A DNA stretch of 64,000 nt. Source: Macrostomum lignano (taxonomy: Eukaryota). Made by a program: the position numbers and the translations under genes. Each line of letters opens with the position of its first letter. Position 1 is the first letter of the stretch. Under the pieces are notes generated by a model, which ran no database searches, was not told the origin of the DNA, and was given only the letters and a program-made list of their open reading frames with translations. Of the stretch, positions 1,308 through 28,000 are shown in pieces. The stretch lies in the NCBI GenBank assembly GCA_002269645.1, contig NIVC01001203.1, positions 1-64,000 of the forward strand, in the 5' to 3' direction.

Positions 1308-4300
1308 TGTTGTGTATGAACTTAAGTTCTATGGTTTATGGGTGAAGCCTTATTCATATTTTAAGTATAGCAGCCAGCTACTTCGCTGCGGAAAATATAC
1401 GCGCTGCATGCATCTACGATCTCTTCCTAACTTGGCATCTTGCATTCGTCTTCGTTACTACGAAAGTACAACATGGCGACGAGGAAAATTTAATTCGCCG
1501 CGGGACGATACTGCAGTCACCAAATCTTCATCCCGATGTCTTCCGGACTCGACTTCCGACTGGGGGAGATGCCGCTGTGCTACCCGATGTCGAACAGTAT
1601 TTCAAGCGCCTCGGTTTTTACATTAGCGCAACGGAAAAGAATGACCAGAGCAAAGCCGTTCTACTTGCTACTTGTGGAGATGCCGCATTTTCACTGATTG
1701 AGACACTTGTGCAGCCAGAAGACATTTTAAACGATACAAAGTGTACGTTCGATTTCATCAAAGAAGCGGTACTGAGCCACTTGAAACCCAAGCGCCTTCT
1801 TCACTACGACAGACATCTGCTACATACTATGGTCCAAATACAGGGTGAGTCGGTGACAAAGTTTTTGGAGAGACTGAAGACACAGGCCAACAAATGCGAA
1901 TTCGGCAACCTGCGAGAAGAGTTAATTCTTTCTCAGTATATTTTCGGACTGGCTGATAATTCTCTGAAGCAAAAATTACTAGTGAAGGAAAAGCTGGATC
2001 TAGAGACTGCGGTTAAGGATAGTCTCTTATCGGAGTCCGTATCTCAAGCTACTGATTCGAGCAAAACCGTCGCAGCAGTGCAGAAAACCACTCACAAGAA
2101 GACCGGCAGCAACCAAAAGTATCCAACGGTATCCAGGCCAATGCCAACAACGCCGAATCATTCTAAGTCTAGCTGCCATTCCTGTGGTAACCCGGGTCAT
2201 CTTAGAAATACCCGCAAGTTCCGTAATGCGACATGTCACAAGTGCGGAAAAACCGGGCACATTGCCAGAGCATGCAGGTCCAACATCGGTGGGAGCAAGA
2301 AAGTCACGTACGCGGAAGTTGAAGCAACCGACGCTGATCCACCTGATTCAGCTGTGTACTCGGTGATCAAGGCTACTCCATGCGACGAACTCTGGAAAAT
2401 AGTCTGCACGATCGGTGATTCCACAGTCCATATGTGCGTCGACTCTGGTAGTCAGGTAACAATTTTGCCAGTAACCATCGTAGAGCAAGCCGGATTGCAC
2501 ATGGTTGACGCGGACATTCGATCACTCAAAGTTTTCGGGGGAGCTTCAGTTTCCGTACGAGGCATGGCTAAGGACGTCACGATTGAGCTGAGAAACGGCA
2601 AAACGGCATGCGGAGACATATATGTCGGGGACCCATCCAGTCAAGCCATTTTAGGAATAAATTTTATTCGTGCCTTCAACCTATTGACGGTAGACGAATT
2701 TCTGTGCCATCCAGTGCAGTGTGATGAAAATTTAAGATTCCAGGCCAGCTTTCGCCTGAAGGACGGGGCCTCTACCGATGGAATGTGCTTTCCTGCCAGA
2801 TCCCTTCCGTTCTCAATTAAAACTTTGGTTGAACTGGAGCTGAAAAGACTGGAAAGTGCAGGTACCATCTACCCAGTTCACTCGCCTAAGGTATCGTGCC
2901 CTATTGTTCCTGTGTTGAAACCAGAAGGATCAAAGAGACCCATTAGACTGTATGGAGACTATTCAGTCACTCTCAACAGACTGATAGACCGAGATCGATA
3001 TCGACTGCCAACTTTGAAAGAAATCCTTCAAAAGATCCCAAATTCGAAAGTGTATTCAGTGCTTGACCTCGAAGACGCATTCTTGCAGATTCCCCTAACG
3101 CCAGAAAGTCAGATCTTACGTGTATTTCCACCCACGTAGGACATTTTGCCTTCCGCAAGTTACAATTTGGCATATCGGCAGCACCACTGATATTTCAGGA
3201 AGTTATGGATATCTTGCTCAAAGGAATACCAGGCACTGCTTCTTATCAGGACGACATCATTCTAGGCACTGAAACAATGGAGCAGCATCGACAGATCCTG
3301 GTGCAAGTCAAGGAAAAACTGAAAAAGCATGGATTCAAGATCAATGAGCGTAAGACTCAGGAGTGCAAGAAAGAAGTCACATTTCTGGGATTTCTCCTCC
3401 GAGATGGGAAACTTTTGCCTGATCCTGCAAGAGTGGAAGCTCTATCCAACTTGTCAGAGCCAAAAGACCGGGATCAATTGAGAAGTGCTATATGCACCTT
3501 AAGACACTACGGGATTTTTTGTCGGAACTTCTCTATGATCGCCAAGCCGCTCTATTACCTCCTAAAGAAAGGGGTTCAGTGGAAATGGACTGTCGTTCAC
3601 TCGAGTGCGTTCTCCCAACTGAAAGCTGCTGTAACGGAAGGTCGAATCGTTTCTTATGATATAAAATAGGCCGTTGTTTCTAACCTGCGACGCTTCTCAG
3701 AGTGGAGTCGGATTTGTGCTGTCCCACGACACGAACCAAAAAGAAGTTGTATGGCTGGGAAGCAGAGTTTTGACCAAGGCTGAGGCCAACTACGCCAACA
3801 TTGAGCGGGAGGCTCTTGCAATTATCGAGGGTGTAAAATATTTTCATCAATTTCTGGCAGGCCGTCATTTTACAATCATCTCTGATCACAGACCTTTGCA
3901 GTACATCTTCTCTACAACAAAAGTTCCTGACCGAGTTTCTGCGAGACTCCAGAGATGGGCATTGCTGCTCAGATCCTATGACTACACTGTCACTTACTCA
4001 AAAGGAGACACCATGCTCGCAGCAGTTACTCTGTCCAGAATTCCTTCAACAAACGCTTCTACTTCGTTTTCAAATTTTGATGTCAATCTTCTGGAGGTAA
4101 ACTCTCTCGTAGAATTTTCTTCTTCTGGGACAATTCTTCGGCGTGTCGCCAACACCAGAGACCCTGAAATTGATATTATCAAGAAGTTTGTTACTCAAGG
4201 TTGGCCAAGCTAAATTTCTAAACAGCTGCTTCCGTACACCAAATCCAAGGCGGAATACTCCATTCAAAACGGGATTCTGTTCAAAGGGATCCGAATCGTG

Positions 4301-5563
4301 CCTCCAAAGTCCATGCGCAGAGAAATTCTTCAAATTCTTCACGAGAATCATCCGGGCATTGTGCGCATGATCAGACTAGCTCGAGAGTACTTCTGGTGGC
4401 CTTACATTGACGCCCAGATCAATAGCTTCGTTCAAAGGTGTCCTTCCTGCCAACTAAATTCGAGAAAGCGAACAAATGCAAATCTGCATTCATGGGAAGA
4501 TGCAAAGTTCTTCTTCGAACGTGTTCATCTGGACATAGCATATTTCAAGGAAAACACTTCTTGGTTCTCATCGACTCCTTCTCTCGGTGGATTGATGTAC
4601 ATCAGCTGTCCAATCTCACAGCCAACTCTCTTATTCCAGCATGCAGACGAACATTTAAGTACATGGGACTTCCAACGTGCATTGTGACTGACAATGGAAC
4701 CAATTTTCGATCAAAAGAGTTCGCAGAATTTCTCAAGAAGAATCTAATTAACCATGTCCTAACACCACCTGGTCATCACCAGTCAAATGGGATTGTGGAG
4801 AGAGCTATCCAAGAGTTGAAAGTGACTCTGAAGCAGGACAGTAATGACATAGGTTCCGAATGTGAGAAGGTGTTGATATCATTCTGCCTTTCGAAGAACA
4901 CTACACCGAATTCCGAAGGAGCGATTCCTGCTGCACAACTGTTTATGCAACGCCCAAGAACGCGCCTCACTGCAACCTTTACAGAATGGGACAAACCGCT
5001 AACTACCCCAATTCCTGTCTACATCAACGTAGAAGGAAAGTCAGACAAGGTCCCAGAAGAAATCCAAGGACTTCATGGATCAAATACCTACTTGGACAGC
5101 AAAGGACGGGTTGTTCATGCATCTGATGCAAGCCAAGGACTACAGAGAACTCACAAGAGATTACCTCGCCTGGACCTGCCAATGTTGGCAGCAGCAAGGA
5201 GAAGGAAATGGAGACTACGACTCCTGCTGAAGTGGAGACAACCAGCGATCAAAGTCCCGAGTACCAAGTTTCTCGTCGAAGTCAGAGGCTCCGAAAAGCC
5301 CCTGATCGGCTGACCTATTCCTGATTTATTTGATCGTTAGACAAAATAGAAAACAGTCATTTATTTCTCTCCAGGTTAATTGCTAAAATATGGGGGTGTT
5401 GTGTATGAACTTAAGTTCTATGGTTTATGGGTGAAGCCTTATTCATATTTTAAGTATAGCAGCCAGCTACTTCGCTGCGGAAAATATACGCGCTGCATGC
5501 ATCTACAATCTCTTCCTAACTCGGCATCTTGCATTCGTCTTCGTTACTACGAAAAGTACAACA
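1308..5563 (+). mobile_element. Full-length Ty3/Gypsy LTR retrotransposon (Mag-like), 4256 bp, decayed
   Basis: The 5' LTR is 1308-1473 and the 3' LTR is 5397-5563 (TGTTG...CAACA; 2 substitutions and 1 indel). A 5-bp TSD GTTAA sits at 1303-1307 and 5564-5568. The PBS TGGCGACGAGGA at 1474-1485 is complementary to the typical eukaryotic tRNA-Ser(GCU) 3' end. A short G-rich PPT-like tract precedes the 3' LTR. Confidence 0.97.
1577..5313 (+). pseudogene. Gag-pol polyprotein (gag, tandem CCHC knuckles, protease, RT, RNase H, integrase), broken by frameshifts
   Basis: Motifs seen: CHSCGNPGH...CHKCGKTGHIARAC knuckles (first lacks its last Cys), VDSGSQ protease, LDLEDAFLQIPL and YQDD in RT, TCDAS and EREALAI in RNase H, LHENHPG...CPSCQ and IVTDNG...SNGIVER in integrase. 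Domain order is PR-RT-RH-IN. Frame changes occur near 3120, 3667, 4210 and 4545. Confidence 0.93.
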
Positions 5564-6806: not shown

Positions 6807-7964
6807 AGCCCCAAGACACAGCGAGTGTGCGTGCCTGACGATTAGAAAGTAAGGGCCGCTGTACACCCTGTGTGAGCGTGTGTATGAGTGCGTGCCTGCA
6901 TATAGCATTAGAACTTGTATGTGTTCAGGAATCAACACAACTCACTTTCGTAGTTTAGAGCAAACACAGAATTTATCATGCTGTTGCCGCAGATCTGTGA
7001 AGAGTTTCCCGAGCAGTTCATAGAGCAGCTTGACTCGCTCAGCTGTCCATGAAGACCGTAGGACCAGCCGCAGGCACAGAACTTTGAGTACTGAAGACTT
7101 ATGTAGGGAAATCCGCCCAGAGCGCACACGTCGCTGCAAAGCTCGTGGGTCATATTGGAATAGCTGAAGATAAAACAGGGCCTATATGACTTGATTTCCA
7201 TACCAGAAATCTCTGCTACTTTGTCTAGAGCGCAGAGGTCTCTATCCGTATTGTCTCGAAAGCAGCCGATGTAGGACCTGCCGAGGAGGCTGCCTGAGCA
7301 CACCGAGAAAAGACAACAGATGAAGAAGCCGAGTATCATGATGGATTGTTCGAGTATCACGGCGAAGAATTTTCCTATTGCCCTAAAAACTGACAATTAT
7401 CTTCTTTTTGGGAAGAACCCAGGCGTATTTGATTGGCTAAACCTTTAATTAGCTGGGTGAGCAGTATCCCAGCAGCTTGTTTTGCAGTAGCAAGAAAGAG
7501 CATAGCTCGTACGAGTGCTATCAAGTGCTTTAATTGACACCTGGAATACTTCACAACATGAAAGTATTGTATGTATGTATTTGATAAAACTGATCGGGGT
7601 AGCTCTAATCCGTCCAACCCTCGCACACCGCTCCCCCCACTTCATTCCTCAACGAGATGCCCTGGAAATCGGAGGATTATGCCGTTAGCTGGAAGTTTCA
7701 TATCGACAAAAGACGGGATTTTTTATAACTGATCCCTAAACTGATCATTCACAATTTCAAATATTGAAGCCTAAAGATTCAAAAGTTGATCGATCTTGTG
7801 TAATTGTGCCCAGCACAGATAATGCTACTGGCAGACGATGGATTACTTCAGTCGTCCTTGACTTCGAGCTGATAAAATTTGGATTTTGCTTGTGTTATTA
7901 CTAAAGTTAAGAAGGTATCGCCAAGTACTTTAACTCGTCTCGGCTCTTAGGCTATCGATTCGCT

Positions 7965-9624: not shown

Positions 9625-10478
9625 TATACTATGCTATAATATTGCTGTTTGTCGATTATCTTATATGCTCCGGCTTGGGACCCGTTTGTGGATCCTTTTT
9701 GTGCCTCTCAAGCGTACAAAAAGCTTCTCAATAGTACAGGAACTAACTTGAAGCGAACCCTAAAAACAGAACATTCCTAGGAGTTCTAAAAAGGAGTAGC
9801 AGTAGCCATCGAAAGAGGTCACGAATGCAGCTTTCTACGCTTGCTGATCTTCTATCATTGAGCAAAAAAATAGAACAGAATAATTCCCGCTCAAAGTATT
9901 CCCAAAATTCTTGCAAAAGCTTTGCCTGGAATTCAAACGAAACTAACTTAGCTATAACTTTGCAGGCTTTTCTCTCCCTTTTCGACAATAGAATGGTGTT
10001 TTTTCAACTAAACTGCTTGCATGAAACTTAAAGTACAATAATATACTCGTACATAAAGGGCCCGTTCGGTAAAACTTTCGTAAGTTCCGTCGTTCGATCC
10101 AACTTACGCACGAGAGTTAAGAACCGTCTCAGAACGTTCTTAAGTGCGTTGGGTGAATTTTTCGCAGATAAATTCGTAACTTACGCAGTAGCTGCGATCA
10201 AACTTAAGAATTCATGCCTGACTTTTTCCTCCGCCAGTGGTATTTTTGGAACTGATTTTACCATAATTGGAACTTAAATTCGTAAAAAACACACGTTGCA
10301 CTCTTAAATTAAAGTAAGACAAAATCATGCTCATTTATCCATTACCATTACAAGCAATATGAGCCATGACCATTTTGTCACAGGTCGATTCCATTGTTGT
10401 ATTTAAAACATTAAAAACATTCAAACAAGGGTGCCTTATTCATTCGCATATACAAATAAGACCTAGCGAATTGCTTAA

Positions 10479-11297
10479 TTACGCTCCTAGTGTCCTTTGA
10501 CACATCATGTCATTAAAATTAAGCTGTTGACGGTTCTCATTACCTCGATTATTCTCTTCTATCGTCAGTCTTTCCTGCTCAACGCGTAAACGTTCCGTTG
10601 CGATCTTCAGCCTCTCTCTCTCTCGACGAACAATCTGTCGTTTTCAACTTCCAATCGAGCTTCCTCCACCCGAAGACGTTTTATTTCCAAGCTTTCTATC
10701 AGCCCAAGTTTGCTTTGCTCTGGCCGACGCTTCGTGTTCTTAGCAGCGGCGTTGGCAACAGACTCTTCACTTCTTCGTCGTCAGCTGTCTCGTACTCAGG
10801 CGATGCGCTCCTGCCAACTGCTCCGGCAGATTTATCAGCAGGCGCACTTGCGATATCAATGTACTTGGCCGCCGAGCTTGATGCTGCACTATTGGATTTA
10901 GGCAGCTGCAGTGTGTCAACACCACGTGGCACGCCTTTCACGACCTGTTTTCGGATGGACTGCGCCGCCTTCTTCTCTAAACTCGACAGCTGTGGGGCCT
11001 GTGATGGACCGCCTCCTGTCTTAGCTTGCTCCTTGCGAATTCTGGCTACTTTGTGCTTCAGTTGACTCTTGAAGTCGGACCACCGCTTTCGGCAGTTCTC
11101 TCCAGAACGTCCTTGTCCACCGACTGCATTCACGGTATCCGCAATGTGCTGCCATCCGCGTTTTTTGCGAAAAATCGCTTCGGCAGTGTTTGCGGGGCTC
11201 TCCCAGTAACCTCTCCGCTCGGTCGTTGCTTCTTGCAGCGTCTCGAGTTCCGCCGTAGACCAGTTCGCCGCGCGTTTTGTGCTGCGTTAGAATTCAT
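10479..11297 (-). pseudogene. Harbinger Myb/SANT-like DNA-binding protein with coiled-coil C-terminus (two frameshifts)
   Basis: ATG at 11297. With one A restored in the CAAAAC run it reads MNSNAAQKRAANWSTAELETL...GWQHIADTVNAVGG...NCRKRWSDFK...TGGGP, a Myb_DNA-bind_5-type pattern. A second frame change near 10700 gives ...ESLEIKRLRVEEARLEVENDRLFVERERLKIATERLRVEQERL...GA*, with the stop at 10479. Confidence 0.85.
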
Positions 11298-11364
11298 TGC
11301 ATTCCAAGTATCAGCTTCTCTTTATGCTGTTGTATGCTATCTTTATGATTGCCACTCTACTTAA

Positions 11365-11635
11365 ATATCGATTGGTCAAGGCTGCTTGAAACGCTTTGGC
11401 GGCAAGATCAATTATGTTATGGTTGGGGGGGGGGGTGCTCGGCCCAGCTTGAGTCTTTCCCCGCGGCGGCCACTGGTTGGCTGGGCTTGCGTTTTTGTGT
11501 TTTTCTTTTCTAGCCCCATTCAGTCGGATCTGCTCGGCGGGCGCGCTGATTGGCTGAGAGGTCATTTCTCATGTTTGGCGTTTCTCTCTCTCTCTCGCTG
11601 TCGGCCCCTCTACCCTGTTTATGTGGTATATAGTG
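11365..11635. promoter_or_regulatory. Putative bidirectional promoter of the Harbinger element
   Basis: ATTGG (reverse CCAAT) at 11371 and 11549, GC-rich boxes, and TATATA at 11627. The segment lies between the divergently oriented Myb gene and transposase remnant. Confidence 0.4.
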
Positions 11636-11713
11636 CTCATGCCTGGCCCAGCCAGCTCCCCGCGTTGCGCCCCTCGCCTAGCTCTTCAAACTAAACTAGC
11701 GATACTCAAACGA

Positions 11714-11758
11714 GCCGTATCGACGGTCTCTTTCTGCGAAGACTCAATTTACTGCGAG
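11714..11758 (+). other. Spliced-leader-like 45-mer inside the Harbinger element
   Basis: GCCGTATCGACGGTCTCTTTCTGCGAAGACTCAATTTACTGCGAG matches at 39/45 positions, ungapped, the Macrostomum-type SL as I recall it (GCCGTAAAGACGGTCTCTTACTGCGAAGACTCAATTTATTGCATG). The reference is from memory and needs verification. Confidence 0.75.
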
Positions 11759-12204
11759 CAAAATAAAGCGGTCAAGTGGTGGCGATATTCGAACGAGCCT
11801 AACAGTTTCTGGCACCGGTAAGACCCCGAGTTCATTCGCTTCTTTAGCTTTTTCGAGGCCTTGCCGTAGCAGTGTTTCCATAGCTAGAGCGTCTTCACGC
11901 CTGTGACTGTGACCACTGCAGCACAGCAGCGTTGTATATTGTGTATTATTGTAGTACTGTACCGGTTACTTTATATAGTGTGTGCAACCTACAGCATCGA
12001 AACTAGAAGCACTCGAGAGTGTCACCACACCTCGAGCCGCAGCGTGAACTCTGAGTGTCACAACACCAGAGGGATCGAACTATTATCGCAGAGCGTCGTC
12101 ACGCCTGCTCGTATCCATAAAAGTACAGACAGAGCGTCACTACGCCTGTTATATTACGTAAAACATATTGTACTCGGGACTGGGCACCCAAACCGACCCG
12201 GGTT

Positions 12205-12505
12205 GCGACACGAATGTATATTTGAGGAGCAATTATCAGGTCGGCTTGATAAGGCGGTCAGCCAGTCTCAGAGTATGGGGACATAAAGTTCCGATGACGG
12301 TGGAATCTTCATTAACACGCTCGTAGAAAGGGATTTCACTCGATCAATGTTCAGGCCGTATGTAGTGCCAATCTCGCATTTACAAACGTGGCCTGGCATT
12401 AGCCGCTAGCCATGGAAGCAACTTCTGAAAATGAAGCCGCACTGGCTGAAGACACCGCTGCTGGTCGAACAGAAAGGTAGCGGATCATGAAGCTACTCCT
12501 ACCGT
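12205..12505 (+). pseudogene. Harbinger (DDE_Tnp_4-type) transposase remnant, heavily deleted
   Basis: From 12322 it reads RRKGFHSINVQAVCSANLAFTNV, the Harbinger NRKG.HSINVQ.VC motif. A VSQS HTH-like piece lies upstream and a C-terminal-like piece downstream, with stops and deletions between. Confidence 0.8.
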
Positions 12506-13124
12506 GACTGACTTAAACACAATTGGTGTTTTCTGCTATTTAAAATTCAAACTAACAATTTTCGCTAGTGTTTGATATTTTCAGTCTTTAAATTCACTCG
12601 AAATATACAGTAAAATGCGAAGTTTTTGACTGAATGAAGTCGGCGCTGTGCATTTTCACAACTAAAGAGTGACTTACGACAGGTCCGACCTGTCTTAGAT
12701 TTACGGCGGAACTTAATTAACAAGCCGAAGTGACTTACGAAAGTTTCACCGAACGCAAATTAACGCGTGCGCAATGACTTAAGAAGTGTAGTAGACCTTG
12801 TGATTCCCCGTTGAAATCTCGCTATTTATTCTCCAAATTGTGCTAGGCCTAACTGCTTTATCTTATTAAACTATCACTGAATTGTCTACTTCCAATAGCG
12901 TTGTCTGTTTCGAGCTACGATTTTTCCTAGAAATCCCTAATTCACGTGATTTTCTAGAAATCTCGTGATAGCGTGTAGTGCCCGAGCGGTAAGACACTGT
13001 CTAATTTCCTAATTTAATCCGAAATGTCTGCGTTTTCAGAGGATCAAGGGTGTCCAGCGGTAGCGTATTTATTCCCCTAATGCCTAATTTCTTAGCGCCT
13101 AATAAGTTTTATCAGCCTACACGG

Positions 13125-13295
13125 CTTTCTTGGGGTCTACACGACCTCAAATCTCCCCTTTTATTCTCCTATTCTGGGTCTTCACGACCTTAAAGTTCTC
13201 CGTATCCTGACTCCTAGTCCTGGGTCTCCACGACCTTTAGTTTTCTTTATTCAGATTCCTAACTCTGGGTCTCCACGACCTTTAGTTCTCCCTAT
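13125..13295. repeat. Degenerate tandem repeat (~43-46 bp, core GGGTCTCCACGACCT)
   Basis: Four copies of the core with variable linkers. A (TTTTGAAC)n run follows at ~13333-13382. Confidence 0.7.
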
Positions 13296-14393
13296 TCAGT
13301 AAAGAAATAGCGAAACAAGTCTTAGCGGAAGTTTTTGAACTTTTGAACTTTTAAACTTTTGAAATTTTGAACTTTTGAACTTCAAATTCTAAGAGTTATT
13401 AAGCGGTACCAGAGAACAAGTTATTTATTTTTCCAGCCCAAACTGCTTCCTTATATAGTAATTTACAAGAGGAGGAGGGGTGAGCAAACATACGTTTAAA
13501 CAAAAAACAATGGAATTTATAACAAAATAACGTTTTAGAACAAAATTTTACAATAAATCAAAACAAAAGGGGAGAAATTTGCTGATTGGTTGTGATACAA
13601 TGCACATGGTTAATTACTATAAGTAGAATGATTAGGTTATTTATACATGTTCAACCCTGCCTCAGAAGCTTCTTAAATCTATGAACGGTCTTAACCGATG
13701 GTTTCACCGAAAATTTTACATCATGGCGCCAACGTAAGTTTGAATTTAAGGATACGCAAGCGTTATAGAACGGGCCCAAAAACGATTTGACTTATGCATT
13801 TTTGTCAAGAATTTTGGAGATAGCATTAACTTGCAGTCGATTTCCTTTTAAAAAATTTTGGTGAAATTTAATAATAAGATGTGACGGCTCGTCTACGGCT
13901 GTGCGATCGAGAAAGGAAAGTTATACTTTTTTGATGTTTTATTTTTTTGAGACGATATATTTTTGAGACGATGTACGCAAACAAAAGAACGAGATAGAGA
14001 AAAAAGAATTGTATCTTTGGCCTTGACAGAGACATATTTAGTTAATTTTAGTAGGTTCATTTATGGGACCAATTCAAATTCATGATAGTTTCTATGATAA
14101 AAACAAGTCTAGAAAAGAAAACAGATTTAATGTTGTTACAGTTTAAACCAAAGCCCATGCATACTCAGCCATTTATAGCAAGAGCTTTTTGATTTGGTGC
14201 TGAAGACTTCAAGATTTCTAAAACAATTTGTAATAAGATTTTGAATCCAGGCAGTTGATAAAAACTTAAAATCGCTTGAACACCATTTTTTCTGAATTTT
14301 CTGAGTAGCTACACTGAAGCTATTTTAATATACTCTGGGCTAAAAGGTATCGTCAAGTACTTTAACTTTGGCCTCTTTGGCCATCGATTTCAT

Positions 14394-16390
14394 TCAAAAT
14401 CGAACGTAGAAATCGCCATCCACGCTGGCCAGAGGTGTCGGCACGAGGGCGAACTTCATCAGACTGCACAGCTGCAGGTTCTCGTTAAACAGAACAGATT
14501 GACAGTCGGATTTGCATAGCAACAGACAGTTTGCTGGGCTGCTGGCATTGGCATTCCAGTAGGCAGAGACGGAGCTCAGCACGGAGACGTACTCTCGGCT
14601 GGATCGCTTGAAGAAGTCCGAGACTGGAAAAAAACAGAAAGAAGTAGAAAACTCTTTTGAAAAGAAGCATAGAAAAGAGATGAACGATGGAAATACGGAT
14701 TCAAACAGGAGCTGTAGTGGGGAGCCTAATTAGCTACCTAGGAAAACCCCACCAGTTAGCTTAACCAGTGTTGCAGTCTACCTCGCAGGCAAACTCAATT
14801 AATGCATCATATTGCCTTAAGCTCTTAAATTATGAATGTTAAGGGCTGAACTGTTGCAATTCACATGCGAGCCCGCCATACTTCTGTTTGCCTAGCGTAA
14901 AGTCTATTGCAACTAGCCTGTATGCCTGCATGCATGCCCTCATCTAGAATTTTTTATTATTTTTTTTCTACTCGCTTGGTCTAAACAGCAGAAAACTGTG
15001 TCCAATATTTGCCTTCTGCAGTAAAGCCAGCGTACTCGTATAACTCATTGAGCTTGTCTTCCTATTCTGAATAGGATCTGATAGGACTGGCAAAATAATT
15101 ACAGCAGCAGAGCGACAGCTATGAAATCATTTTCCGAGTCGTTTGTTATTAAATATTGACACTAAAGATACGAATTCTATAGATGCCGATTGTCAATAAT
15201 CTACCTAAGAAAGAGATCAAAAAGGAAAAATAAACTTTAGGCAAATAAGCATAGATTTGGTAGCTAAATATGTCGTGTCTGTAGTTAACACTATGGTTGT
15301 GTCTATAGCACAATAATAATAAATAAAGGGAATAAAGGAGAAGAGAGGAGGCAATGGGGTGGAGAGATCAAATAGGAGAGGAGAGAGGGGAGGGAGAGGG
15401 GAGATGAAGTAGGAAAGGAGATGAGAGAAAAAGAGGAGAGAGAAGGGAAGGGAGAGGAAAAGTTGAGAAAAAGAGAGAGGAGAGGAGAGAAGATGAGATG
15501 AGAATAGAGACCTGAGAAGAGAGAGGTGAGAGAAGAGAGCTGAGAAGAGGGAGGTGAGGAGGAGAGTTGAGAAGAGAGAGGTGAGAGAAGAGAGCTGAGA
15601 AGAGGGAGGTGAGAGAGGCGAGTTGAGAAGAGGGAGGTGAGAGAGGAGAGTTGAGAAGAGAGAGGTGAGAGAAGAGAGCTGAGAAGAGGGAGGTGAGGAG
15701 GAGAGTTGAGAAGAGAGAGGTGAGAGAAGAGAGCTGAGAAGAGAGAGGTGAGAGAGGAGAGTTGAGAAGAGAGAGGTGAGAGAAGAGAGCTGAGAAGAGA
15801 GAGGTGAATGAAGAGAGCTGAGAAGAGAGAAGTGAGAGAAGAGAGCTGAGAAGAGACAAACCTATGGACCGGATTGCTATTGTGAAGTTTTAAAGGACCC
15901 GAGGGCCGGATAGAGAGGCTTTGCGGGTCGCATGTGACCTATGGTCTATAGGGCTCTAAGAGTACCGAAGTGGCTCACATTCATATTTCAACTCGTAGAC
16001 AGAGTTGGCCCACGCGCCGCCGCACTCTTGGGAAGAGTTCCCAGTACAGGATGAGCCGCATGTTGCCAGGCCTCGACTGCCGTAACTCCAGCCGCAGTAG
16101 CACTCCCTGCCCCCTTGAATGCCCATGTAAGGAAAGCCTCCCAGAGAGCAGATGTCGCCGCAGAGCTCCAGAGTCATTGAAGAAGACAGAATGACGCAGT
16201 GAGCATTCGAATGCACGGAGAAGCTTTTTAGCAAAGTGACTCCCTTCAGTCCGGGCAGATCGCGTGGCGAACTGCCGTCAGAGTAGCAGCCGAGGTAGCT
16301 GCGGCTGTGCAGCCTGCCTGACAGACTCCTCTCTGCTAGGAGCAGAAAAGATAGGGCTAAAGCGGCCGCTTTGAGAAGAATAGCTGGCAT
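14394..16390 (-). CDS. Secreted WSC + PAN/apple-like protein, copy C (intact, 213 aa)
   Basis: Exon 1 is 16390-15979 (412 nt; MPAILLKAAALALSFLLLA signal-like; WSC; donor GAAT|GTGAGC). Exon 2 is 14623-14394 (230 nt; acceptor TTCCAG; CLLLCKSDCQSVLFNENLQLC). The total of 642 nt is in frame. A TATA box (TATAAAAG, minus strand) lies near 16440. Confidence 0.88.
15309..15943 (+). mobile_element. Truncated copy of the polypurine-filled hAT MITE in the intron of copy C
   Basis: It has a GA-rich tandem tract and a right subterminal region (AAGGACC...GGCCGGATA.AGAGGCTTTGC.GG.CGCATGTG.CCT) shared with 853-1273. TIRs are missing. GTCTATAG occurs at both 15301-15308 and 15944-15951. Confidence 0.65.
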
Positions 16391-18707: not shown

Positions 18708-19947
18708 TCAGTATCGAACGTAAAAGTCGCCATCCATTCCAGCCAGGGCTGTTGGCACCAGGCCGAACTTGATGAAGCTGCACAGCTGAAATAGCGGCGA
18801 GAAAATTACCGCTTGGCAATCGGCGTTGCACCCGAGTAGGCAGTGGGCAGCTGTGGTTGCAGTCATATTCCAATAGACTGAGTGGCTGCTGAGCACGGCG
18901 ATGCTGGCTCGTTCGGCGAGTTTGAAAATTGTCGGGTCTGAAAGAATCGAAAAATGAGTTTTCGTCTTTTAAATCTACGGTATCTCTAGAGCAGGTGTCT
19001 GCAAAATTTTTACCCCAAGGGCCAGATAAAGAACCTGCAGCATGGCAGCATGACTGCCGGCGAGAGGACGGGAAGAGAAATAGGAGAAAGGAGAGGCGAA
19101 GGGAATAAAGAAGAAGAGAGGACGCAATTGGGGTGGAGAGAAGTAGGGAGATAAAGTAGGAAAGGAGAGGAGAGAAAGAGACGAGAGAGAACTGAAGGGA
19201 GAGGAAGAGTTGAGAAAAAGAGAGATGAGAATAGAGACATGAGAAGAGAGAGGCGAGAGAAGAGAGTTGAGAAGAGAGAGGTGAGAGAAGAGAGCTGAGA
19301 AGAGAGTGGTGAGAGAAGAGAGCTGAGAAGAGAGAGCCGAGAGAAGAGAGCTGAGAAGAGACAAACCTATGTGCCGGATTGCTATTGCGAAGTTTTAAAG
19401 GACCGCTATGTACGCCAAAGGCGCTATGTACTTTACCAGCTGTTTGGATAGGAAGCGGACAAAAAGACCCCTTTATGAATAGCAGAGAAGTCCATTGCTG
19501 AGTCTTAGCTCAGCACAACCTACGGCTATATTCGAGAGCGTAAACCGAATTGGCACTGGGTCCGCCGCACTGTTGCGAAGAATTTCCCAAGCAATTGTGG
19601 CTGCAAGCTCCGCTAGCCGCTAGGCCGTGCCTGCCGTAGCTCCAGCCGCAGAAGCACTCCTGGCCAATCTGGACGCTCATGTAGGAGAACCCACCGAGCG
19701 AGCAAATGTCGCCGCACCGCTCCAGAGTCGCAGCGGTGGAAAGGACGACGCAGTTAGCAACCGAGTGCACCGAGTAGCCCTGCAGAGCAGTGACACCCGC
19801 GAGTCCCGGGAGGTCTCGAGTCGTGGAGTCCGCGTAGCAGCCCAGGTACCTGCGAGTGTAAACTCTGGCAGGCTGACTGCTTCTAGCTAGTAGCAAGCAG
19901 ATCAAAGCTAGGGTTGTTAGCTTAATAACGACGACTCGACTCTGCAT
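18708..19947 (-). CDS. Secreted WSC + PAN/apple-like protein, copy D (intact, 217 aa)
   Basis: Exon 1 is 19947-19524 (424 nt; donor AGCC|GTAGGT). Exon 2 is 18937-18708 (230 nt; acceptor TTTCAG; CLLGCNADCQAVIFSPLFQLC...DGDFYVRY*). The total of 654 nt is in frame. Confidence 0.88.
18992..19408 (+). mobile_element. Truncated copy of the polypurine-filled hAT MITE in the intron of copy D
   Basis: A degenerate left TIR CAGGTGTCTGCAAA is preceded by the palindromic CTCTAGAG, which fits the hAT nTCTAGAn target preference. The interior is GA-rich and the right end is truncated. Confidence 0.7.
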
Positions 19948-20794: not shown

Positions 20795-21517
20795 TTACAC
20801 TCGAGTGTAAAACGCGCCAACCGTTTCCTTTAAAGCATCCGGTATCCCAGTAAACTTCAGCAGGTAGCAGATTCCATTCTGCTCAGAGTAGAGCACAGCC
20901 TGGCATCTCGTGGTGCACTGGATCAAACAGTCGCTGGGTCTGGAAGCACTCACTGCCCAAATTACTTGACACCGATATGTATGCCGGGGGCGATTTTTTG
21001 AACAGGTTGGAATCTGAAAGTTTAGTAGGAGTAAAGGTAGGACAGGCCTACTGCACTTCGTGTAAAATATCCGATTTGATTTCATATATTAAATAGAAGA
21101 AAACTCACGGATATACTCGAGCGCGTACACGGAGTTGGCATGCCCGTCGCCGCACTTCAGTGCCGAATTCCCAGTACATTTCATGCTGCAGCTGTGCTCA
21201 GGTCGGGAGCCGAACCGGCCGTAGGTCCAGCCGCAGAAGCACTCCCGACCGAACTGCAGTCCAATGTAGGCGAAGCCGCCAGCGGAGCACAAGTTGCCGC
21301 ACAGTTGGGGAGTCATCTTGTTGGAATCAACGCAGTGCTTCGAACCAGACACGGTGTACCCGTCCAGAAGACTCACTCCTTTGAGTCCGGTCATATCCCT
21401 GTCGGCACTGTCGTGAAAGCAGCCGACATAGGCAAGGCGAACCAGTCTGCTCAGAGCGCCACCACTGAGCAGCAAACTGATGAGGCAGCAGCAGGTGATG
21501 ACGGAAGCTGAACGCAT
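20795..21517 (-). pseudogene. WSC + PAN/apple-like gene copy E (WSC exon intact, exon 2 frameshifted)
   Basis: Exon 1 is 21517-21109 (409 nt; donor ATCC|GTGAGT). Exon 2 is 21013-20795, 219 nt, i.e. 11 nt shorter than in C and D. The spliced frame HSNLFKKSPPAYISVSS leaves the PAN-like frame (WAVSASRPSDCLIQCTTRCQAVLY...) and hits an early stop. Confidence 0.75.
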
Positions 21518-25075: not shown

Positions 25076-28000
25076 TCAAAGCGCCGCACTGAGCCCCTGG
25101 CGTTTAGCAAACAGGTGATGCGCCACCATCCACTGGTTGCCATTCTCGTAGCCAAACACCTCCGAGCAGAAGATGAAGAACTTGCGCCAGTTGGCAATTT
25201 GTTCGTCAGCCTCCTGAGCAGCGAAGCTCGGGCCCATCAGAGCGCGTCTGGCGGCATCTCTGCAGAAATGCGCGAATTTGATATGAAAGCTGCTGGTATC
25301 ACCGCATTCAGCGAAGTCTTTTACAAATTACGTGACCGATTAGCATCAATCGAGGATCGAGAAATTTAAAACACTTGACCCGCTTTTAGTTGGCCATTGG
25401 TCATTTGTCTAATACAAGCCAAATATGGAATGTATTACAGGGGTCGGCAAACTCTGGCCACATGCGGCCTGCGAAGCCTCTCTATTCAGCCTTCGGGTCC
25501 ATTGAAACTTCTCTCTCTCATCTCTCTCTCCTCTCTTTATTCTCTACTCTCTTCCTACTCTCTCTCCTCTCTTCTCTCCTCTCTCCTCCTTCTCTCCCTT
25601 CATCTCTTTTCTTCTCTCCTCTCTTTTCTTTTCTCCTTTCCTCTCCCCTTCTTTTCTCTTTTCTCTCTCTCATCTCATCCTTCTCTCCTCTCCTCTCTCT
25701 CCTCTCTCCTCTCGTCTCTCTCCTCTCCTCTCCTCACTCCTCTCCGCTCCGCTCCTTTCTTCTCTCCTCTCTCTCCTCTCCTCCTCTCCTCTCATCTCTC
25801 CTCTCTTCTCTCCTTTCTTCTTTTCTCTCTCCCTCTCTTCTCCCTCCTCTACTCTTTTATCCCTTCTCTCTCCTCTCCACTGTTTTCTCTTTTCTTTCTT
25901 TTCTCCTCTCTCGATCCTCGCTTATCTGACCAGCAGCCACGAGCTAGACTCTAAATCTAACCCCTGAGGTAAGAAAGCTTGCCGACCTCAGTTCAGTACT
26001 ATAAAGAATGCACCCACCTTGGCAAAGCGTCAAGCTTTCGCAACCAGGCCTCCAGAGTCCGACTATAGTGCTTGCCGTTGATGAGCCACAGGTCCTCCAG
26101 CCGGAGATGCTGCTGCATGTGCAGAAACAGATCAGCGGAGAACATGGATCCACCAGTAAAGAAATTTCTAGCCATCCATTCCGTGTCGGAGTTGCGGCGA
26201 GTGTCAAAGTTGTAAGCGAATTGGCGATGGCACAGGATCTGGGAGAACAGCTTGCCCCCTGTATATGGCATGGAGAATTAAAGATAGATCAGTGTCCAGC
26301 CATTGTGATTAGTTATGATTCAGGTTTTGTTATACAGAAGATTAGTACTAGGTGCTGGGTGGCAATCCGGACCAACTCCGAGGCACATGCGCCCGACGAT
26401 GTTAAAAAGTCAGGGTCGTTGTTCATGCGGAATGGGCATGACTGCTTGCCTCCGTGCTGACTGCACCCTGCGAATCGACTATATCGTAAAAATTTGCAAC
26501 AGTGTACAAAATAAGTTTTTTACTGGTGCGCACCTGAAGACTGCGTACGGCTGTTCAGTCCAAGGCCTGGTGGGATTGCCACACACCCTCAATTAACCCA
26601 GCTAATACTGGACCTATTTTACAGCTGGGTGAACTGAAGCAACGCAGAGTTTAAGTGTCTTGCTCAAGGGTACAGTTTGTTTCGAGTGGGTCGAGAATCG
26701 AACCCCCGACCTTCAGTCATGAGTCCGATGCTCTAACCACTAGACTACAACCTAGTGGTGATTCTAACAATTCATAGTTCTTACCAGGTCGCAGCCAGTC
26801 ATTGACTCGAGCAAACAGGGCTCCAACGTTTTTCATGTGCTCCAGAATTTCGATTGATACAACGCGATCGAATCGGTTGGGACCAGGTTGGAAATCCGAA
26901 ATGTCGGTTGTGCAGACTGAGAGACGCTGCGAGCCGCCTGGAATTTGCCTGTTGATTTTGGATGCAAATATTAATAATTAACACTTCAATGTGTCCTGAA
27001 TGAAGGGACTGAAAATGCCAATGGTTCGATCAAAGATGGGATAAACACATGAGATGGTTAGTGGATTATATTCACTGATTGAATATATGGACGAGATGTC
27101 ATTGAATCACCGATGGAATGAACTCAGGATGTCAGTGAATCACCGATGGAAATGAACTCAGGTGGTGTCAGTGAATCACCGATGGAATGAACTCAGGTGG
27201 TGTCAGTGAATCACCGATGGAAATGAACTCAGGTGGTGTCAGTGAATCACCGATGGAAATGAACTCAGGTGGTGTCAGTGAATCACCGATGGAATGAACT
27301 CAGGAGATGTCAGTGAATCACCGATGGAACGAACTCAAGTGAAGTGATGTTAGTGAATCACTGATGGAATGAACTCAGGAGATGTCAGTGAATCACCGAT
27401 GGAATGAACTCAGGAGATGTCAGTGAATCACTGATGGAATGAACTCAGGAGATGTCAGTGAATCACTGATGGAATGAACTCAGGAGATGTCAGTGAATCA
27501 CCGATGAAATTAACTCAGGTGATGTCAGTGAATCACCGATGGAATGAACTTAGGAGATGGCAGTGGCTCAGTGATGGAATGAACTCAGGAGATGGCAGTG
27601 GATCAGTGATGAAATGGCACAAGTTAAAAAGAGACGAGTGAACTACTTCACCAGTCTTTGAAGTCTTGAAGACTCAAAAAGCTGACTAATGATCATGCTG
27701 GAGGAGAAACACGGAGAGCAATATAAATTACCTTGCCCGCTCTTCAATGTCCAGCCGTTGTGTGGCAGAGTTGGACACGGCCGTCACCTGACAGTTGGGA
27801 AATCGCTCCAGCAGAAACAGGCTCAGAGAGCCCCAGCCGCAACCCATGTCAAGCACCTGCATGCCATCAACAATGCCAGCACGCTGACAGATGGTATCCA
27901 AGCTGCGAACTTCTGCCTCAGCAAGATCGTCAGCGGCATCTCCAGTTCCAGCAGTCTCTATGCCACTGTGCAGATTGCATGAGTACTTCATTCGAGGCCC

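What the first reader, a model, noticed from the sequence alone, without database searches (positions are those of the whole stretch)
11714..11825. A Harbinger DNA transposon carries a genomically encoded spliced-leader mimic upstream of its transposase
Seen: a 45-mer at 11714-11758 lies inside the Harbinger element, about 85 nt after a TATATA motif and in the same sense as the transposase remnant about 500 nt downstream. A canonical donor (CCG|GTAAGA at 11818) follows 59 nt later. Recalled knowledge: it matches 39/45 positions of the Macrostomum-type spliced leader, which ends in a conserved AUG. Here that AUG reads GAG and no GT follows directly, so it cannot be an ordinary SL donor. Inference: the element may start its transposase mRNA with an SL look-alike, gaining SL-type translation or stability without trans-splicing and without an upstream AUG. 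Alternatively it captured an SL RNA gene fragment, or the 5' end of its own trans-spliced transcript was copied back into the DNA. I do not know of SL mimicry described in a DNA transposon.
Basis: partly seen in the sequence, partly recalled or inferred. Interest (0 to 1): 0.85.

Follow-up and report, generated by a model that had tools for sequence, protein, structure and literature searches.

The report
Decayed spliced-leader copy in dead Harbinger
A 45-base stretch inside a broken Harbinger transposon really is a copy of the Macrostomum-type spliced leader, but it looks like a decaying, RNA-derived insertion, not a working device for starting the transposase message.

Summary
Window 11714-11758 (+) matches the published 45-nt Macrostomum spliced leader (SL) at 39/45 positions. 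It is the only such match in 64 kb, lies inside a TIR-bounded Harbinger copy (10058-13777), and is in sense with the transposase remnant.

The functional "mimic" reading is not supported.
- Similarity to two genuine SL RNA genes recovered from public contigs covers only the exon. The intron, Sm site, hairpins and upstream motif are absent (covariance model 25 bits, against 131-133 for real genes).
- An 18-nt direct repeat (16/18) brackets the block plus 23 nt, like a target-site or template-switch duplication.
- The host element is dead. The transposase lacks residues 1-160 and about 193-305 and contains stops. The Myb gene is frameshifted.
- The only relatives with an intergenic region (L001, L008) lack the block.
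- The block (13% diverged) is no better conserved than neighbouring repeats.

Best reading: a relict SL, copied from an SL-capped RNA into the 5' region of this element by retroposition or by template switching during gap repair. This resembles the relict SLs of dinoflagellate retrogenes.

The parts
10058..13777 (+). Degenerate PIF/Harbinger element copy, from TIR to TIR. The strand given is that of the transposase remnant.
   Evidence: Inverted repeat 10058-10082 / 13753-13777, 25 nt, 80% complementary, starting GGGCCCGTTCGG. Both flanks read AAA. The element is collinear with the intact Harbinger contig L001 in the left arm, Myb gene, transposase C-terminus and right arm.
10515..11283 (-). 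Myb/SANT-like (Myb_DNA-bind_5) accessory gene of the Harbinger. It is now a pseudogene.
   Evidence: Pfam PF13873 E = 1.2e-12. It is 56% identical to P0001 of L001. tblastn pieces fall in three different frames, and the ATG at 11297 is out of frame.
11546..11556 (+). CCAAT-box-like motif CTGATTGGCTG in the divergent intergenic (promoter) region.
   Evidence: The same 11-mer occurs in the L001 intergenic region. Calling it an NF-Y-type CCAAT box rests on general knowledge and was not tested.
11699..11716 (+). Upstream copy of the 18-nt direct repeat, GCGATACTCAAACGAGCC. Its last 3 nt (GCC) overlap SL nucleotides 1-3.
   Evidence: the repeat finder family D4. It is the only pair at 16/18 or better within 150 nt in 1.3 kb, against 0.03 expected from shuffles. 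There is no further exact copy in the window; a third match has 3 mismatches, on the minus strand at 7343-7360.
11714..11758 (+). SL-derived block. It corresponds to SL exon nucleotides 1-45, with mismatches at positions 7, 8, 20, 39, 43 and 44.
   Evidence: 39/45 to the published SL. blastn-short E = 5e-10 and unique in the window. Alignment with the genuine SL RNA genes L005 and L009 shows that similarity stops at the end of the exon.
11759..11781 (+). 23-nt tail, CAAAATAAAGCGGTCAAGTGGTG, between the SL block and the downstream repeat copy. Its origin is unknown.
   Evidence: No other copy in the window. Not significantly similar to the start of the SL RNA intron.
11782..11799 (+). Downstream copy of the 18-nt direct repeat, GCGATATTCGAACGAGCC.
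11818..11823 (+). GTAAGA donor-like hexamer. Its significance is doubtful.
   Evidence: Read directly. Frequency and the second GGTAAGAC at 12988 are. No acceptor or downstream ORF was identified.
11886..12148 (+). Non-coding filler carrying 3-4 copies of an 18-nt motif, AGAGCGTCNTCACGCCTG. It sits where transposase residues 1-160 should be.
   Evidence: No transposase homology. No Pfam hit in any frame.
12304..12402 (+). Transposase (DDE_Tnp_4 / HARBI1-like) core remnant, profile positions 161-193. It contains stop codons.
   Evidence: hmmsearch with a 60-protein profile gives 26.5 bits. tblastn with the L001 transposase gives 63% identity over 27 aa.
12409..12497 (+). Transposase C-terminal remnant, about residues 310-341 of the L001 protein. 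It is fused to the core remnant by an internal deletion.
   Evidence: tblastn. blastn L001 against the window, 12439-12497.
12794..13663 (.). An insertion of about 870 bp that interrupts the right subterminal arm. It carries a 45-nt tandem repeat (13166-13299) and (TTTTGAAC)n (13333-13382).
   Evidence: L001 right-arm homology is split into 12668-12793 and 13664-13772. Tandem repeats. No tRNA found.

Best explanation
The 45-mer is a relict spliced leader. It is a copy of the SL mini-exon alone, made from an SL-capped RNA and not from an SL RNA gene. It was inserted into the 5' region of the transposase gene of this Harbinger copy, or of its recent ancestor.

Two insertion routes fit.
- LINE-type target-primed reverse transcription of a short SL-bearing RNA, with the 18-nt direct repeat as the target-site duplication.
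- Template switching onto an SL-bearing RNA or cDNA during the gap repair that also made this copy an internally deleted, filler-containing derivative. The GCC overlap would be the junction microhomology, and the 18-mer would have been re-copied.

Since then the block has decayed at about the local neutral rate (ATG to GAG and four other changes). It does nothing in this copy, which has no intact transposase or Myb gene.

Shown:
- the block is SL-derived;
- similarity is limited to the exon;
- a direct repeat flanks it;
- the element is dead;
- the block is absent from the readable relatives.

Inferred:
- the RNA origin;
- which of the two routes applied;
- whether the donor RNA was the element's own trans-spliced transposase transcript. 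The block lies about 420 nt from the Myb start, where relatives have the transposase 5' UTR and ATG.
For: 1. SL identity is 39/45, unique in the window, E = 5e-10.

2. Two genuine SL RNA genes were recovered: L005 615-723 and L009 1589-1697. They share an invariant 45-nt exon, GTAAGACACCG, two hairpins and an AUUUUUAG Sm-like site.
- The window matches only exon nucleotides 1-42 to 45.
- The intron-equivalent 64 nt is not significantly similar (p = 0.16-0.33; local alignment p = 0.2; remainder of the intron p = 0.35-0.45).
- Exon identity (39/45) exceeds intron-equivalent identity (37/64), Fisher p = 0.0014.
- The covariance model scores 25.4 bits with many broken pairs, against 131-133 bits for the real genes.
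- The region folds worse than its shuffles (z = +2.4), whereas L005 gives z = -3.3.
- The upstream motifs shared by L005 and L009 (TAGTAGG, CTTT at -4 to -1) are absent.

3. Similarity starts exactly at SL nucleotide 1, the RNA 5' end.

4. An 18-nt direct repeat (16/18) brackets the SL block plus 23 nt. It overlaps SL nucleotides 1-3. It is the only such pair in 1.3 kb, against 0.03 expected.

5. The host copy is dead and rearranged.
- The transposase is reduced to profile positions 161-193 plus the C-terminus.
- The Myb gene is in three frames.
- Non-coding repeat-bearing filler replaces the transposase N-terminus.

6. L001 (Myb 56% identical) and L008 have the same divergent Myb/transposase layout, with intergenic regions of 371 and 450 bp, but no SL-like block.

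7. The SL block's divergence (13%) is not lower than that of neighbouring markers. The flanking repeats imply about 5.6% per lineage and the TIR arms about 10%.

8. Precedent exists. Relict SLs mark retrogenes in dinoflagellates (PMC6050394, PMC5585692). About 30% of transposable-element Iso-Seq reads in Hydra carry an SL (PMC12220107). A genomic SL sequence at the 5' end of a protein-coding gene is noted for M. lignano (PMC8629364). A gag-pol retroelement in the same window shows that reverse-transcriptase-encoding elements are present in this genome.
Against: - No poly(A) tract or recognisable cDNA body follows the SL. The inserted unit is only 65-68 nt, which is odd for classical retroposition.
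- The 23-nt tail has no identified source.
- The 18-nt repeat is a single pair. A longer, gapped version (CAAACTAAA / CAAAATAAA) is not independently significant (p = 0.10), so the exact insert boundaries are uncertain.
- Two of the six mismatches remove the ATG (p = 0.04), and the 106 nt up to GTAAGA contain no ATG. A functional-leader advocate could read this as selection, although 32% of random 106-nt windows also lack ATG.
- No close family member and no second copy from the source genome could be examined. 'One-off insertion' therefore rests on distant relatives only.
- The source species could not be identified. Its own SL is assumed, not shown, to be the canonical one.
Confidence: 0.6

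Rival explanations
1. Decayed SL RNA gene or full-length SL RNA (retro)pseudogene. The whole of about 11714-11814 descends from an SL RNA unit, captured as DNA or reverse-transcribed, and its intron part has decayed beyond recognition.
For: - The covariance model places the window hit over the full model length (25.4 bits, E = 9e-5). It aligns AUAUU...AGCC at 11784-11799 with the Sm-site and third-hairpin region at a similar spacing.
- GGTAAGACCCCG at 11817 matches the exon-intron junction GGTAAGACACCG at 11/12 positions.
- SL RNA genes are multicopy (8 copies reported in M. lignano, PMC8629364).
Against: - Similarity outside the exon is not significant in three separate tests.
- Neutral decay should affect exon and intron equally, yet exon identity of 87% exceeds about 58% for the rest (p = 0.0014).
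- No GT follows the exon.
- The 11/12 junction-like match has a twin at 12988 in unrelated sequence.
- The upstream motifs of real genes are missing.
- The fold is worse than random.
- The second 18-mer is better explained as a duplicate of the upstream 18-mer (16/18) than as an Sm region.
Confidence: 0.2
2. This Harbinger family carries an SL look-alike as the genomically encoded 5' leader of its transposase mRNA. Transcription would start near 11714 and splice from 11818, gaining SL-type translation or stability without trans-splicing.
For: - The block is in sense with the transposase and lies about 420 nt from the Myb start. Relatives have the transposase 5' UTR and ATG at that distance (371 bp in L001, 450 bp in L008).
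- CCAAT-like motifs lie upstream.
- There is no ATG between 11714 and the GTAAGA.
- Two of the six substitutions remove the SL's ATG (p = 0.04).
- GTAAGA within 100 nt has a chance of about 1.6%.
Against: - Nothing can be translated here. Transposase residues 1-160 and about 193-305 are missing, and stops are present.
- L001 and L008 lack any SL-like sequence.
- The block is flanked by a direct repeat, like a secondary insertion.
- It is not more conserved than nearby neutral markers.
- The TATA-like motif is 85 nt upstream, not about 30 nt.
- An SL's special properties depend largely on its trimethylguanosine cap, acquired as an Sm snRNP (general knowledge; the cap is stated in PMC8629364). 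A Pol II mRNA that merely starts with the same letters would not obviously receive that cap.
- 32% of random 106-nt windows also lack ATG.
Confidence: 0.07
3. Assembly artefact. A chimeric read or cDNA contamination placed an SL next to genomic DNA.
For: The SL is abundant in RNA. The block begins exactly at SL nucleotide 1.
Against: - A contaminating cDNA would carry a perfect SL. Here 6 of 45 positions differ, including the otherwise invariant ATG.
- The block sits inside continuous element sequence, with a diverged flanking duplication.
Confidence: 0.03
4. Chance resemblance to the SL.
For: None beyond the shortness of the sequence.
Against: E = 5e-10. 29 of 30 positions match in the core. 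No other hit longer than 10 nt occurs in 64 kb. There were 0 matches in 100 shuffles.
Confidence: 0.01

Closest known systems
Relict spliced leaders of retroposed (recycled) mRNAs, best known from dinoflagellate retrogenes (PMC6050394, PMC5585692)
   Same: An SL mini-exon is encoded in genomic DNA without the SL RNA intron. It starts at the RNA 5' end, is decayed relative to the live SL, and is taken as a footprint of reverse transcription of a trans-spliced RNA.
   Different: No gene body or poly(A) follows the SL here. The inserted unit is only 65-68 nt. It sits inside a DNA transposon in what appears to be a flatworm genome. The event may be a template-switch filler and not a retrogene.
Genuine Macrostomum-type SL RNA gene (109 nt; PMC8629364; examples L005 615-723 and L009 1589-1697)
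   Same: The 45-nt exon sequence matches at 39/45, and the first nucleotide is the same.
   Different: There is no GT donor at the exon end, no Sm site, no hairpins II and III, and no shared upstream motif. The covariance model scores 25 bits, against 131-133 bits for real genes.
Filler DNA in internally deleted DNA transposons made by abortive gap repair and template switching (for example Ac to Ds in maize; from my own knowledge, not checked in a paper here)
   Same: The copy is internally deleted, with unrelated short segments replacing coding sequence. There is microhomology (GCC) at a junction and a short duplication around the inserted piece.
   Different: The filler would be templated by an SL-bearing RNA or cDNA and not by nearby DNA. 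This was not demonstrated.
Chimeric retrocopies made by LINE reverse-transcriptase template switching onto small nuclear RNAs (for example U6/L1 chimeras in mammals; from my own knowledge)
   Same: A small capped RNA is copied to its exact 5' end and joined to a short unrelated 3' piece. The whole unit is flanked by a 15-20-bp duplication.
   Different: No LINE-derived 3' piece or poly(A) was identified. Only the SL exon is present, not the full SL RNA.
SL trans-splicing of transposable-element transcripts (Hydra Iso-Seq, PMC12220107)
   Same: It shows that transposable-element mRNAs acquire SLs, which provides a plausible donor RNA.
   Different: That is an RNA-level phenomenon. Here the SL is in the DNA.

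Membership tests
SL RNA gene (Macrostomum type) | SL mini-exon sequence at the 5' end of the unit | tested here: met
   39/45 to the published SL, starting at nucleotide 1. The terminal ATG is lost.
SL RNA gene (Macrostomum type) | GT splice donor (GTAAG) immediately after the mini-exon, base-paired with exon nucleotides 16-22 | tested here: not met
   CAAAAT follows the exon. The nearest GTAAGA is 59 nt away. The pairing partner TCTTACT is mutated to TCTTTCT.
SL RNA gene (Macrostomum type) | Intron with an Sm-binding site between two hairpins, giving the overall three-hairpin fold | tested here: not met
   Covariance model 25.4 bits, against 131-133 for L005 and L009. Intron-equivalent similarity is not significant. 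Fold z = +2.4, against -3.3 for L005.
SL RNA gene (Macrostomum type) | Upstream promoter-proximal motifs shared by real genes | tested here: not met
   L005 and L009 share TAGTAGG and CTTT at -4 to -1. The window lacks both. This rests on only two reference genes.
PIF/Harbinger DNA transposon | DDE_Tnp_4 (HARBI1-like) transposase | tested here: met
   Remnants only: profile positions 161-193 at 12304-12402 (26.5 bits) and the C-terminus at 12409-12497.
PIF/Harbinger DNA transposon | Second gene encoding a Myb/SANT-like DNA-binding protein | tested here: met
   PF13873 E = 1.2e-12. It is 56% identical to the Myb protein of the intact element L001. It is frameshifted.
PIF/Harbinger DNA transposon | Terminal inverted repeats | tested here: met
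   10058-10082 and 13753-13777, 25 nt, 80% complementary, GGGCCCGTTCGG....
PIF/Harbinger DNA transposon | 3-bp target-site duplication, usually TWA | tested here: inconclusive
   Both flanks read AAA. The two flanks match each other, but AAA is not the usual TAA/TTA.
Relict SL / retroposed trans-spliced RNA | Genomic SL without the SL RNA intron, beginning at the RNA 5' end | tested here: met
Relict SL / retroposed trans-spliced RNA | Flanking target-site duplication | tested here: met
   18-nt direct repeat, 16/18, at 11699-11716 and 11782-11799; 0.03 expected. It is a single pair, so the evidence is suggestive and not proof.
Relict SL / retroposed trans-spliced RNA | Intronless cDNA body with a poly(A) remnant downstream of the SL | tested here: not met
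   Only 23 nt lie between the SL and the downstream repeat. There is no poly(A), and no coding signal in 11759-12330.
   Absent in L001 and L008, but these are distant (56% identity or less). No close relatives or source genome were available. The block is not less diverged than local markers.
   No RNA data for the source organism.

The most novel reading that the evidence does not exclude
The block is not a one-off. An active Harbinger lineage in this flatworm fixed a retro-acquired SL copy as the hard-wired first exon of its transposase mRNA, with the AUG removed and a donor at 11818. This dead copy preserves that architecture. It would be a DNA transposon that bypasses trans-splicing by encoding the leader itself.
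Probability: 0.06. Interest if true: 0.8.

Novelty: new member of a known kind. Interest (0 to 1): 0.3.

Why it matters
If the favoured reading is right, this is a small molecular fossil. It shows that SL-capped RNAs are occasionally copied back into DNA in a Macrostomum-like flatworm genome, as is well documented in dinoflagellates but, as far as my searches showed, little described in animals.

Such relict SLs have practical uses.
- They help in finding retrocopies and RNA-templated repair events.
- They are a warning for annotation. Genomic SL copies can be mistaken for SL RNA genes, as PMC8629364 reports for the first M. lignano annotation, or for trans-splice evidence.

The finding does not change what is known about how Harbinger transposases are expressed.

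Tried and rejected
- **Exact look-ups.** Window ORFs 11621-11821 and 21089-21517 were looked up in the contig collection. Neither is on record.
- **Homologue search with the WSC ORF next to the element.** The aim was to reach an orthologous or homeologous locus. There were no hits.
- **Organism identification via PheRS-beta.** The best hit is 62% identical (a clam); nothing close was found. The species remains unidentified. 'Macrostomum-like' rests on the SL match alone.
- **Viral-contig scans.** Neither the Myb protein nor the SL core gave a hit.
- **Other abundant HARBI1-like Logan transcripts (L010, L011).** These were checked for a 5' SL. None has one, and they come from unrelated organisms.
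- **Rfam.** It has no model that detects even the genuine SL RNA gene in L005, so its silence on the window says nothing.
- **Tandem duplication of an 83-nt unit.** Rejected: there is no similarity beyond the 18-mer (p = 0.81).
- **A second, degenerate SL copy at 11782-11880.** Rejected (p = 0.37).
- **SL RNA intron relocated after a 59-nt insertion (GGTAAGACCCCG).** Rejected as unsupported. The rest of the intron shows nothing, and an equally good match exists at 12988.
- **Homology between the window's post-SL sequence and the L001 5' UTR or transposase N-terminus.** Not detectable.
- **Wasik et al. 2015.** This paper could not be read because it is not held.

Full report
**1. The observation**

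Window 11714-11758 (+) reads GCCGTATCGACGGTCTCTTTCTGCGAAGACTCAATTTACTGCGAG.
- The SL assembled for M. cliftonense is GCCGTAAAGACGGTCTCTTACTGCGAAGACTCAATTTATTGCATG. M. hystrix has the same sequence minus two bases (PMC10468722, supplementary Table S3).
- The 35-nt M. lignano SL is the 3' part of this sequence (PMC8629364).

The window block matches at 39/45 positions, and at 29/30 in the core. With blastn-short it is the only hit longer than 10 nt in the 64 kb (E = 5e-10). The ATG reads GAG, no GT follows, and CCG|GTAAGA lies 59 nt further on.

**2. The setting: a Harbinger, but a dead one**

- On the minus strand, 10515-11283 encodes a Myb_DNA-bind_5 protein (Pfam E = 1.2e-12).
- Its only database relative is P0001, at 56% identity. 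P0001 lies on a 3-kb metagenome contig, L001.
- L001 is an intact Harbinger. It has a Myb gene and a 342-aa DDE_Tnp_4 transposase, divergently arranged around a 371-bp intergenic region.
- The window copy has the same layout and is bounded by TIRs starting GGGCCCGTTCGG at 10058-10082 and 13753-13777.
- Both genes are wrecked. The Myb gene is spread over three reading frames, and its ATG is out of frame.
- Only transposase profile positions 161-193 (12304-12402, with stops) and the C-terminus (12409-12497) survive.
- Where residues 1-160 should be encoded there are about 550 nt of non-coding sequence carrying 3-4 copies of an 18-nt motif.
- An insertion of about 870 bp splits the right arm.

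The SL block lies about 420 nt from the Myb start. In L001 (371 bp) and L008 (450 bp) the transposase 5' UTR and ATG sit at that distance.

**3. Is it an SL RNA gene?**

Scans of public contigs with the SL core returned four trans-spliced mRNAs (L002-L004, L006) and two genuine SL RNA genes.
- L005 615-723 comes from a metagenome contig.
- L009 1589-1697 is a flatworm-like contaminant contig in a 'Flavobacteriaceae' MAG.

The two genes have different flanks but an identical 45-nt exon. In both, GTAAGACACCG, a hairpin, an AUUUUUAG Sm-like site and a second hairpin follow the exon.

The window matches only the exon.
- The 64 nt after the exon are not significantly similar to either intron (global alignment p = 0.16-0.33; local p about 0.2; remainder of the intron p = 0.35-0.45).
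- A covariance model built from the two genes scores them at 131-133 bits. The window locus scores 25.4 bits with many broken pairs. The model finds nothing else in the window.
- The window region folds worse than its own shuffles (z = +2.4). L005 gives z = -3.3.
- The upstream motifs shared by L005 and L009 are missing.
- The GGTAAGACCCCG at 11817 resembles the exon-intron junction at 11/12 positions. An equally good match sits at 12988 in unrelated sequence, so I give it no weight.
- Exon identity (87%) significantly exceeds identity in the intron-equivalent stretch (58%, gap-optimised; p = 0.0014).

Under neutral decay of a whole SL RNA unit, exon and intron would have decayed equally. The simplest reading is that the intron was never there.

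**4. Signs of a secondary insertion**

An 18-nt direct repeat brackets the block plus a 23-nt tail. The copies are GCGATACTCAAACGAGCC at 11699-11716 and GCGATATTCGAACGAGCC at 11782-11799 (16/18).
- The upstream copy overlaps SL nucleotides 1-3 (GCC).
- It is the only pair of that quality within 150 nt in the surrounding 1.3 kb, against 0.03 expected.
- The only further match in the window has 3 mismatches, at 7343-7360 on the minus strand.
- The two 83-nt units are otherwise unrelated, so this is not a tandem duplication.
- A longer, gapped repeat would make the insert exactly the SL, but it is not independently significant (p = 0.10).

Similarity that starts at RNA nucleotide 1, ends at the exon end and is flanked by a duplication points to an RNA-templated insertion.

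**5. Family and conservation tests**

- L001 and L008 have readable intergenic regions, and neither contains anything SL-like.
- L007 is cut within the transposase ORF.
- These relatives are distant. Closer ones could not be found, and the source genome is not in any searchable collection.
- Within the copy, the block's 13% divergence is no lower than that implied by the flanking repeats (about 5.6% per lineage) or the TIR arms (about 10%).
- Two of the six changes remove the ATG (p = 0.04). The stretch to GTAAGA lacks ATG, but so do 32% of random 106-nt windows.

**6. Mechanism**

I favour a relict SL. An SL-capped RNA was copied into DNA at this site by one of two routes.
- LINE-type retroposition, with the 18-nt repeat as the TSD.
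- Template switching during the gap repair that also produced the deletions and filler of this copy.

The donor may have been the element's own trans-spliced transposase transcript.
- Position and orientation fit.
- L001 has a pyrimidine tract followed by CAG about 50 nt before its ATG. I infer this is an acceptor.
- Transposable-element transcripts are commonly trans-spliced in Hydra (PMC12220107).

This could not be shown. The weak points are the very short insert, the unexplained 23-nt tail and the lack of poly(A).

The functional-mimic idea faces four difficulties: there is no ORF to serve, the block is absent from relatives, it carries an insertion signature, and it shows no excess conservation. 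In addition, SL function depends on a trimethylguanosine cap gained through Sm-snRNP biogenesis, which this sequence context lacks.

**7. Comparison and novelty**

The closest known phenomenon is the relict SL of retroposed mRNAs in dinoflagellates (PMC6050394, PMC5585692). PMC8629364 also notes a genomic SL sequence at the 5' end of an M. lignano protein-coding gene that had been mistaken for the SL RNA gene.

I file this as a new member of a known kind. It is modestly interesting as a footprint of RNA-to-DNA copying in a flatworm and as an annotation caveat. The more exciting reading is a hard-wired leader in an active lineage. It remains possible at a probability of about 6%, and a single BLAST against the source genome would settle it.

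Noticed in passing
L009 1589-1697 (JAGQZA010000190.1, labelled 'MAG: Flavobacteriaceae bacterium HKST-UBA79'): This contig of a bacterial MAG carries a complete Macrostomum-type SL RNA gene: a 45/45 exon, the GTAAGACACCG donor, an Sm-like site and hairpins. It is almost certainly flatworm contamination of the bin.
   Followed up: partly
L005 615-723 (Ga0302322_100095745): A genuine SL RNA gene lies on a metagenome contig, about 1 kb upstream of an unrelated 1.1-kb ORF (1775-2922). A partial duplicate, GCCGTAAA, sits 14 nt upstream of the gene start. L005 and L009 share upstream motifs (TAGTAGG, CTTT) that may be promoter elements.
   Followed up: partly
window 1577-5313 (+): An LTR-retrotransposon-type gag-pol is present, with zinc knuckle, aspartyl protease, RVT_1, RT_RNaseH and rve integrase domains. 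It is split into four ORFs by frameshifts or stops. It shows that reverse-transcriptase-encoding elements are present in this genome.
   Followed up: partly
window 6932-7396, 15956-16390, 19510-19947, 21089-21517 (all minus strand): Four paralogous small ORFs of about 145 aa each have a signal-peptide-like N-terminus. The one tested has a WSC domain (PF01822, E = 5e-13). The Harbinger lies between the first and second. They have no homologues in the 5.8-billion-protein database.
   Followed up: partly
window 11886-12148 (+): Three to four copies of an 18-nt motif, AGAGCGTCNTCACGCCTG, lie in the filler that replaces the transposase N-terminus. The motif occurs nowhere else in the window, and its origin and meaning are unknown.
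   Followed up: partly
window 12794-13663: An insertion of about 870 bp lies in the Harbinger's right arm. It has a D-arm-like stretch (GTAGTGCCCGAGCGGTAAGACAC) near 12975, a 45-nt tandem repeat (13166-13299) and (TTTTGAAC)n (13333-13382). It may be a SINE-like element, but ARAGORN finds no tRNA.
   Followed up: partly
L001 (rc) about 2655-3030, compared with window 12668-13772: In L001 the right-arm subterminal region is in direct orientation relative to the left end. In the window it is inverted and forms proper TIRs. L001 may be two adjacent or nested elements, or a misassembly.
   Followed up: no
window 40096-41580 (+); 34032-34508 (+): These are host genes. One is a phenylalanyl-tRNA synthetase beta-subunit exon (B1, B3_4, B5 and CLM domains). 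The other is a DnaJ-domain ORF. The best database identity for PheRS-beta is only 62% (a bivalve), so the source lineage is poorly represented in the searchable protein collections.
   Followed up: partly
window 15368-15859, 25390-25954, about 51800-52500, 59200-60450: Long low-complexity or tandem-repeat arrays give spurious Ser/Leu-rich or periodic ORFs. There are strong GC-skew swings at 54-62 kb.
   Followed up: no
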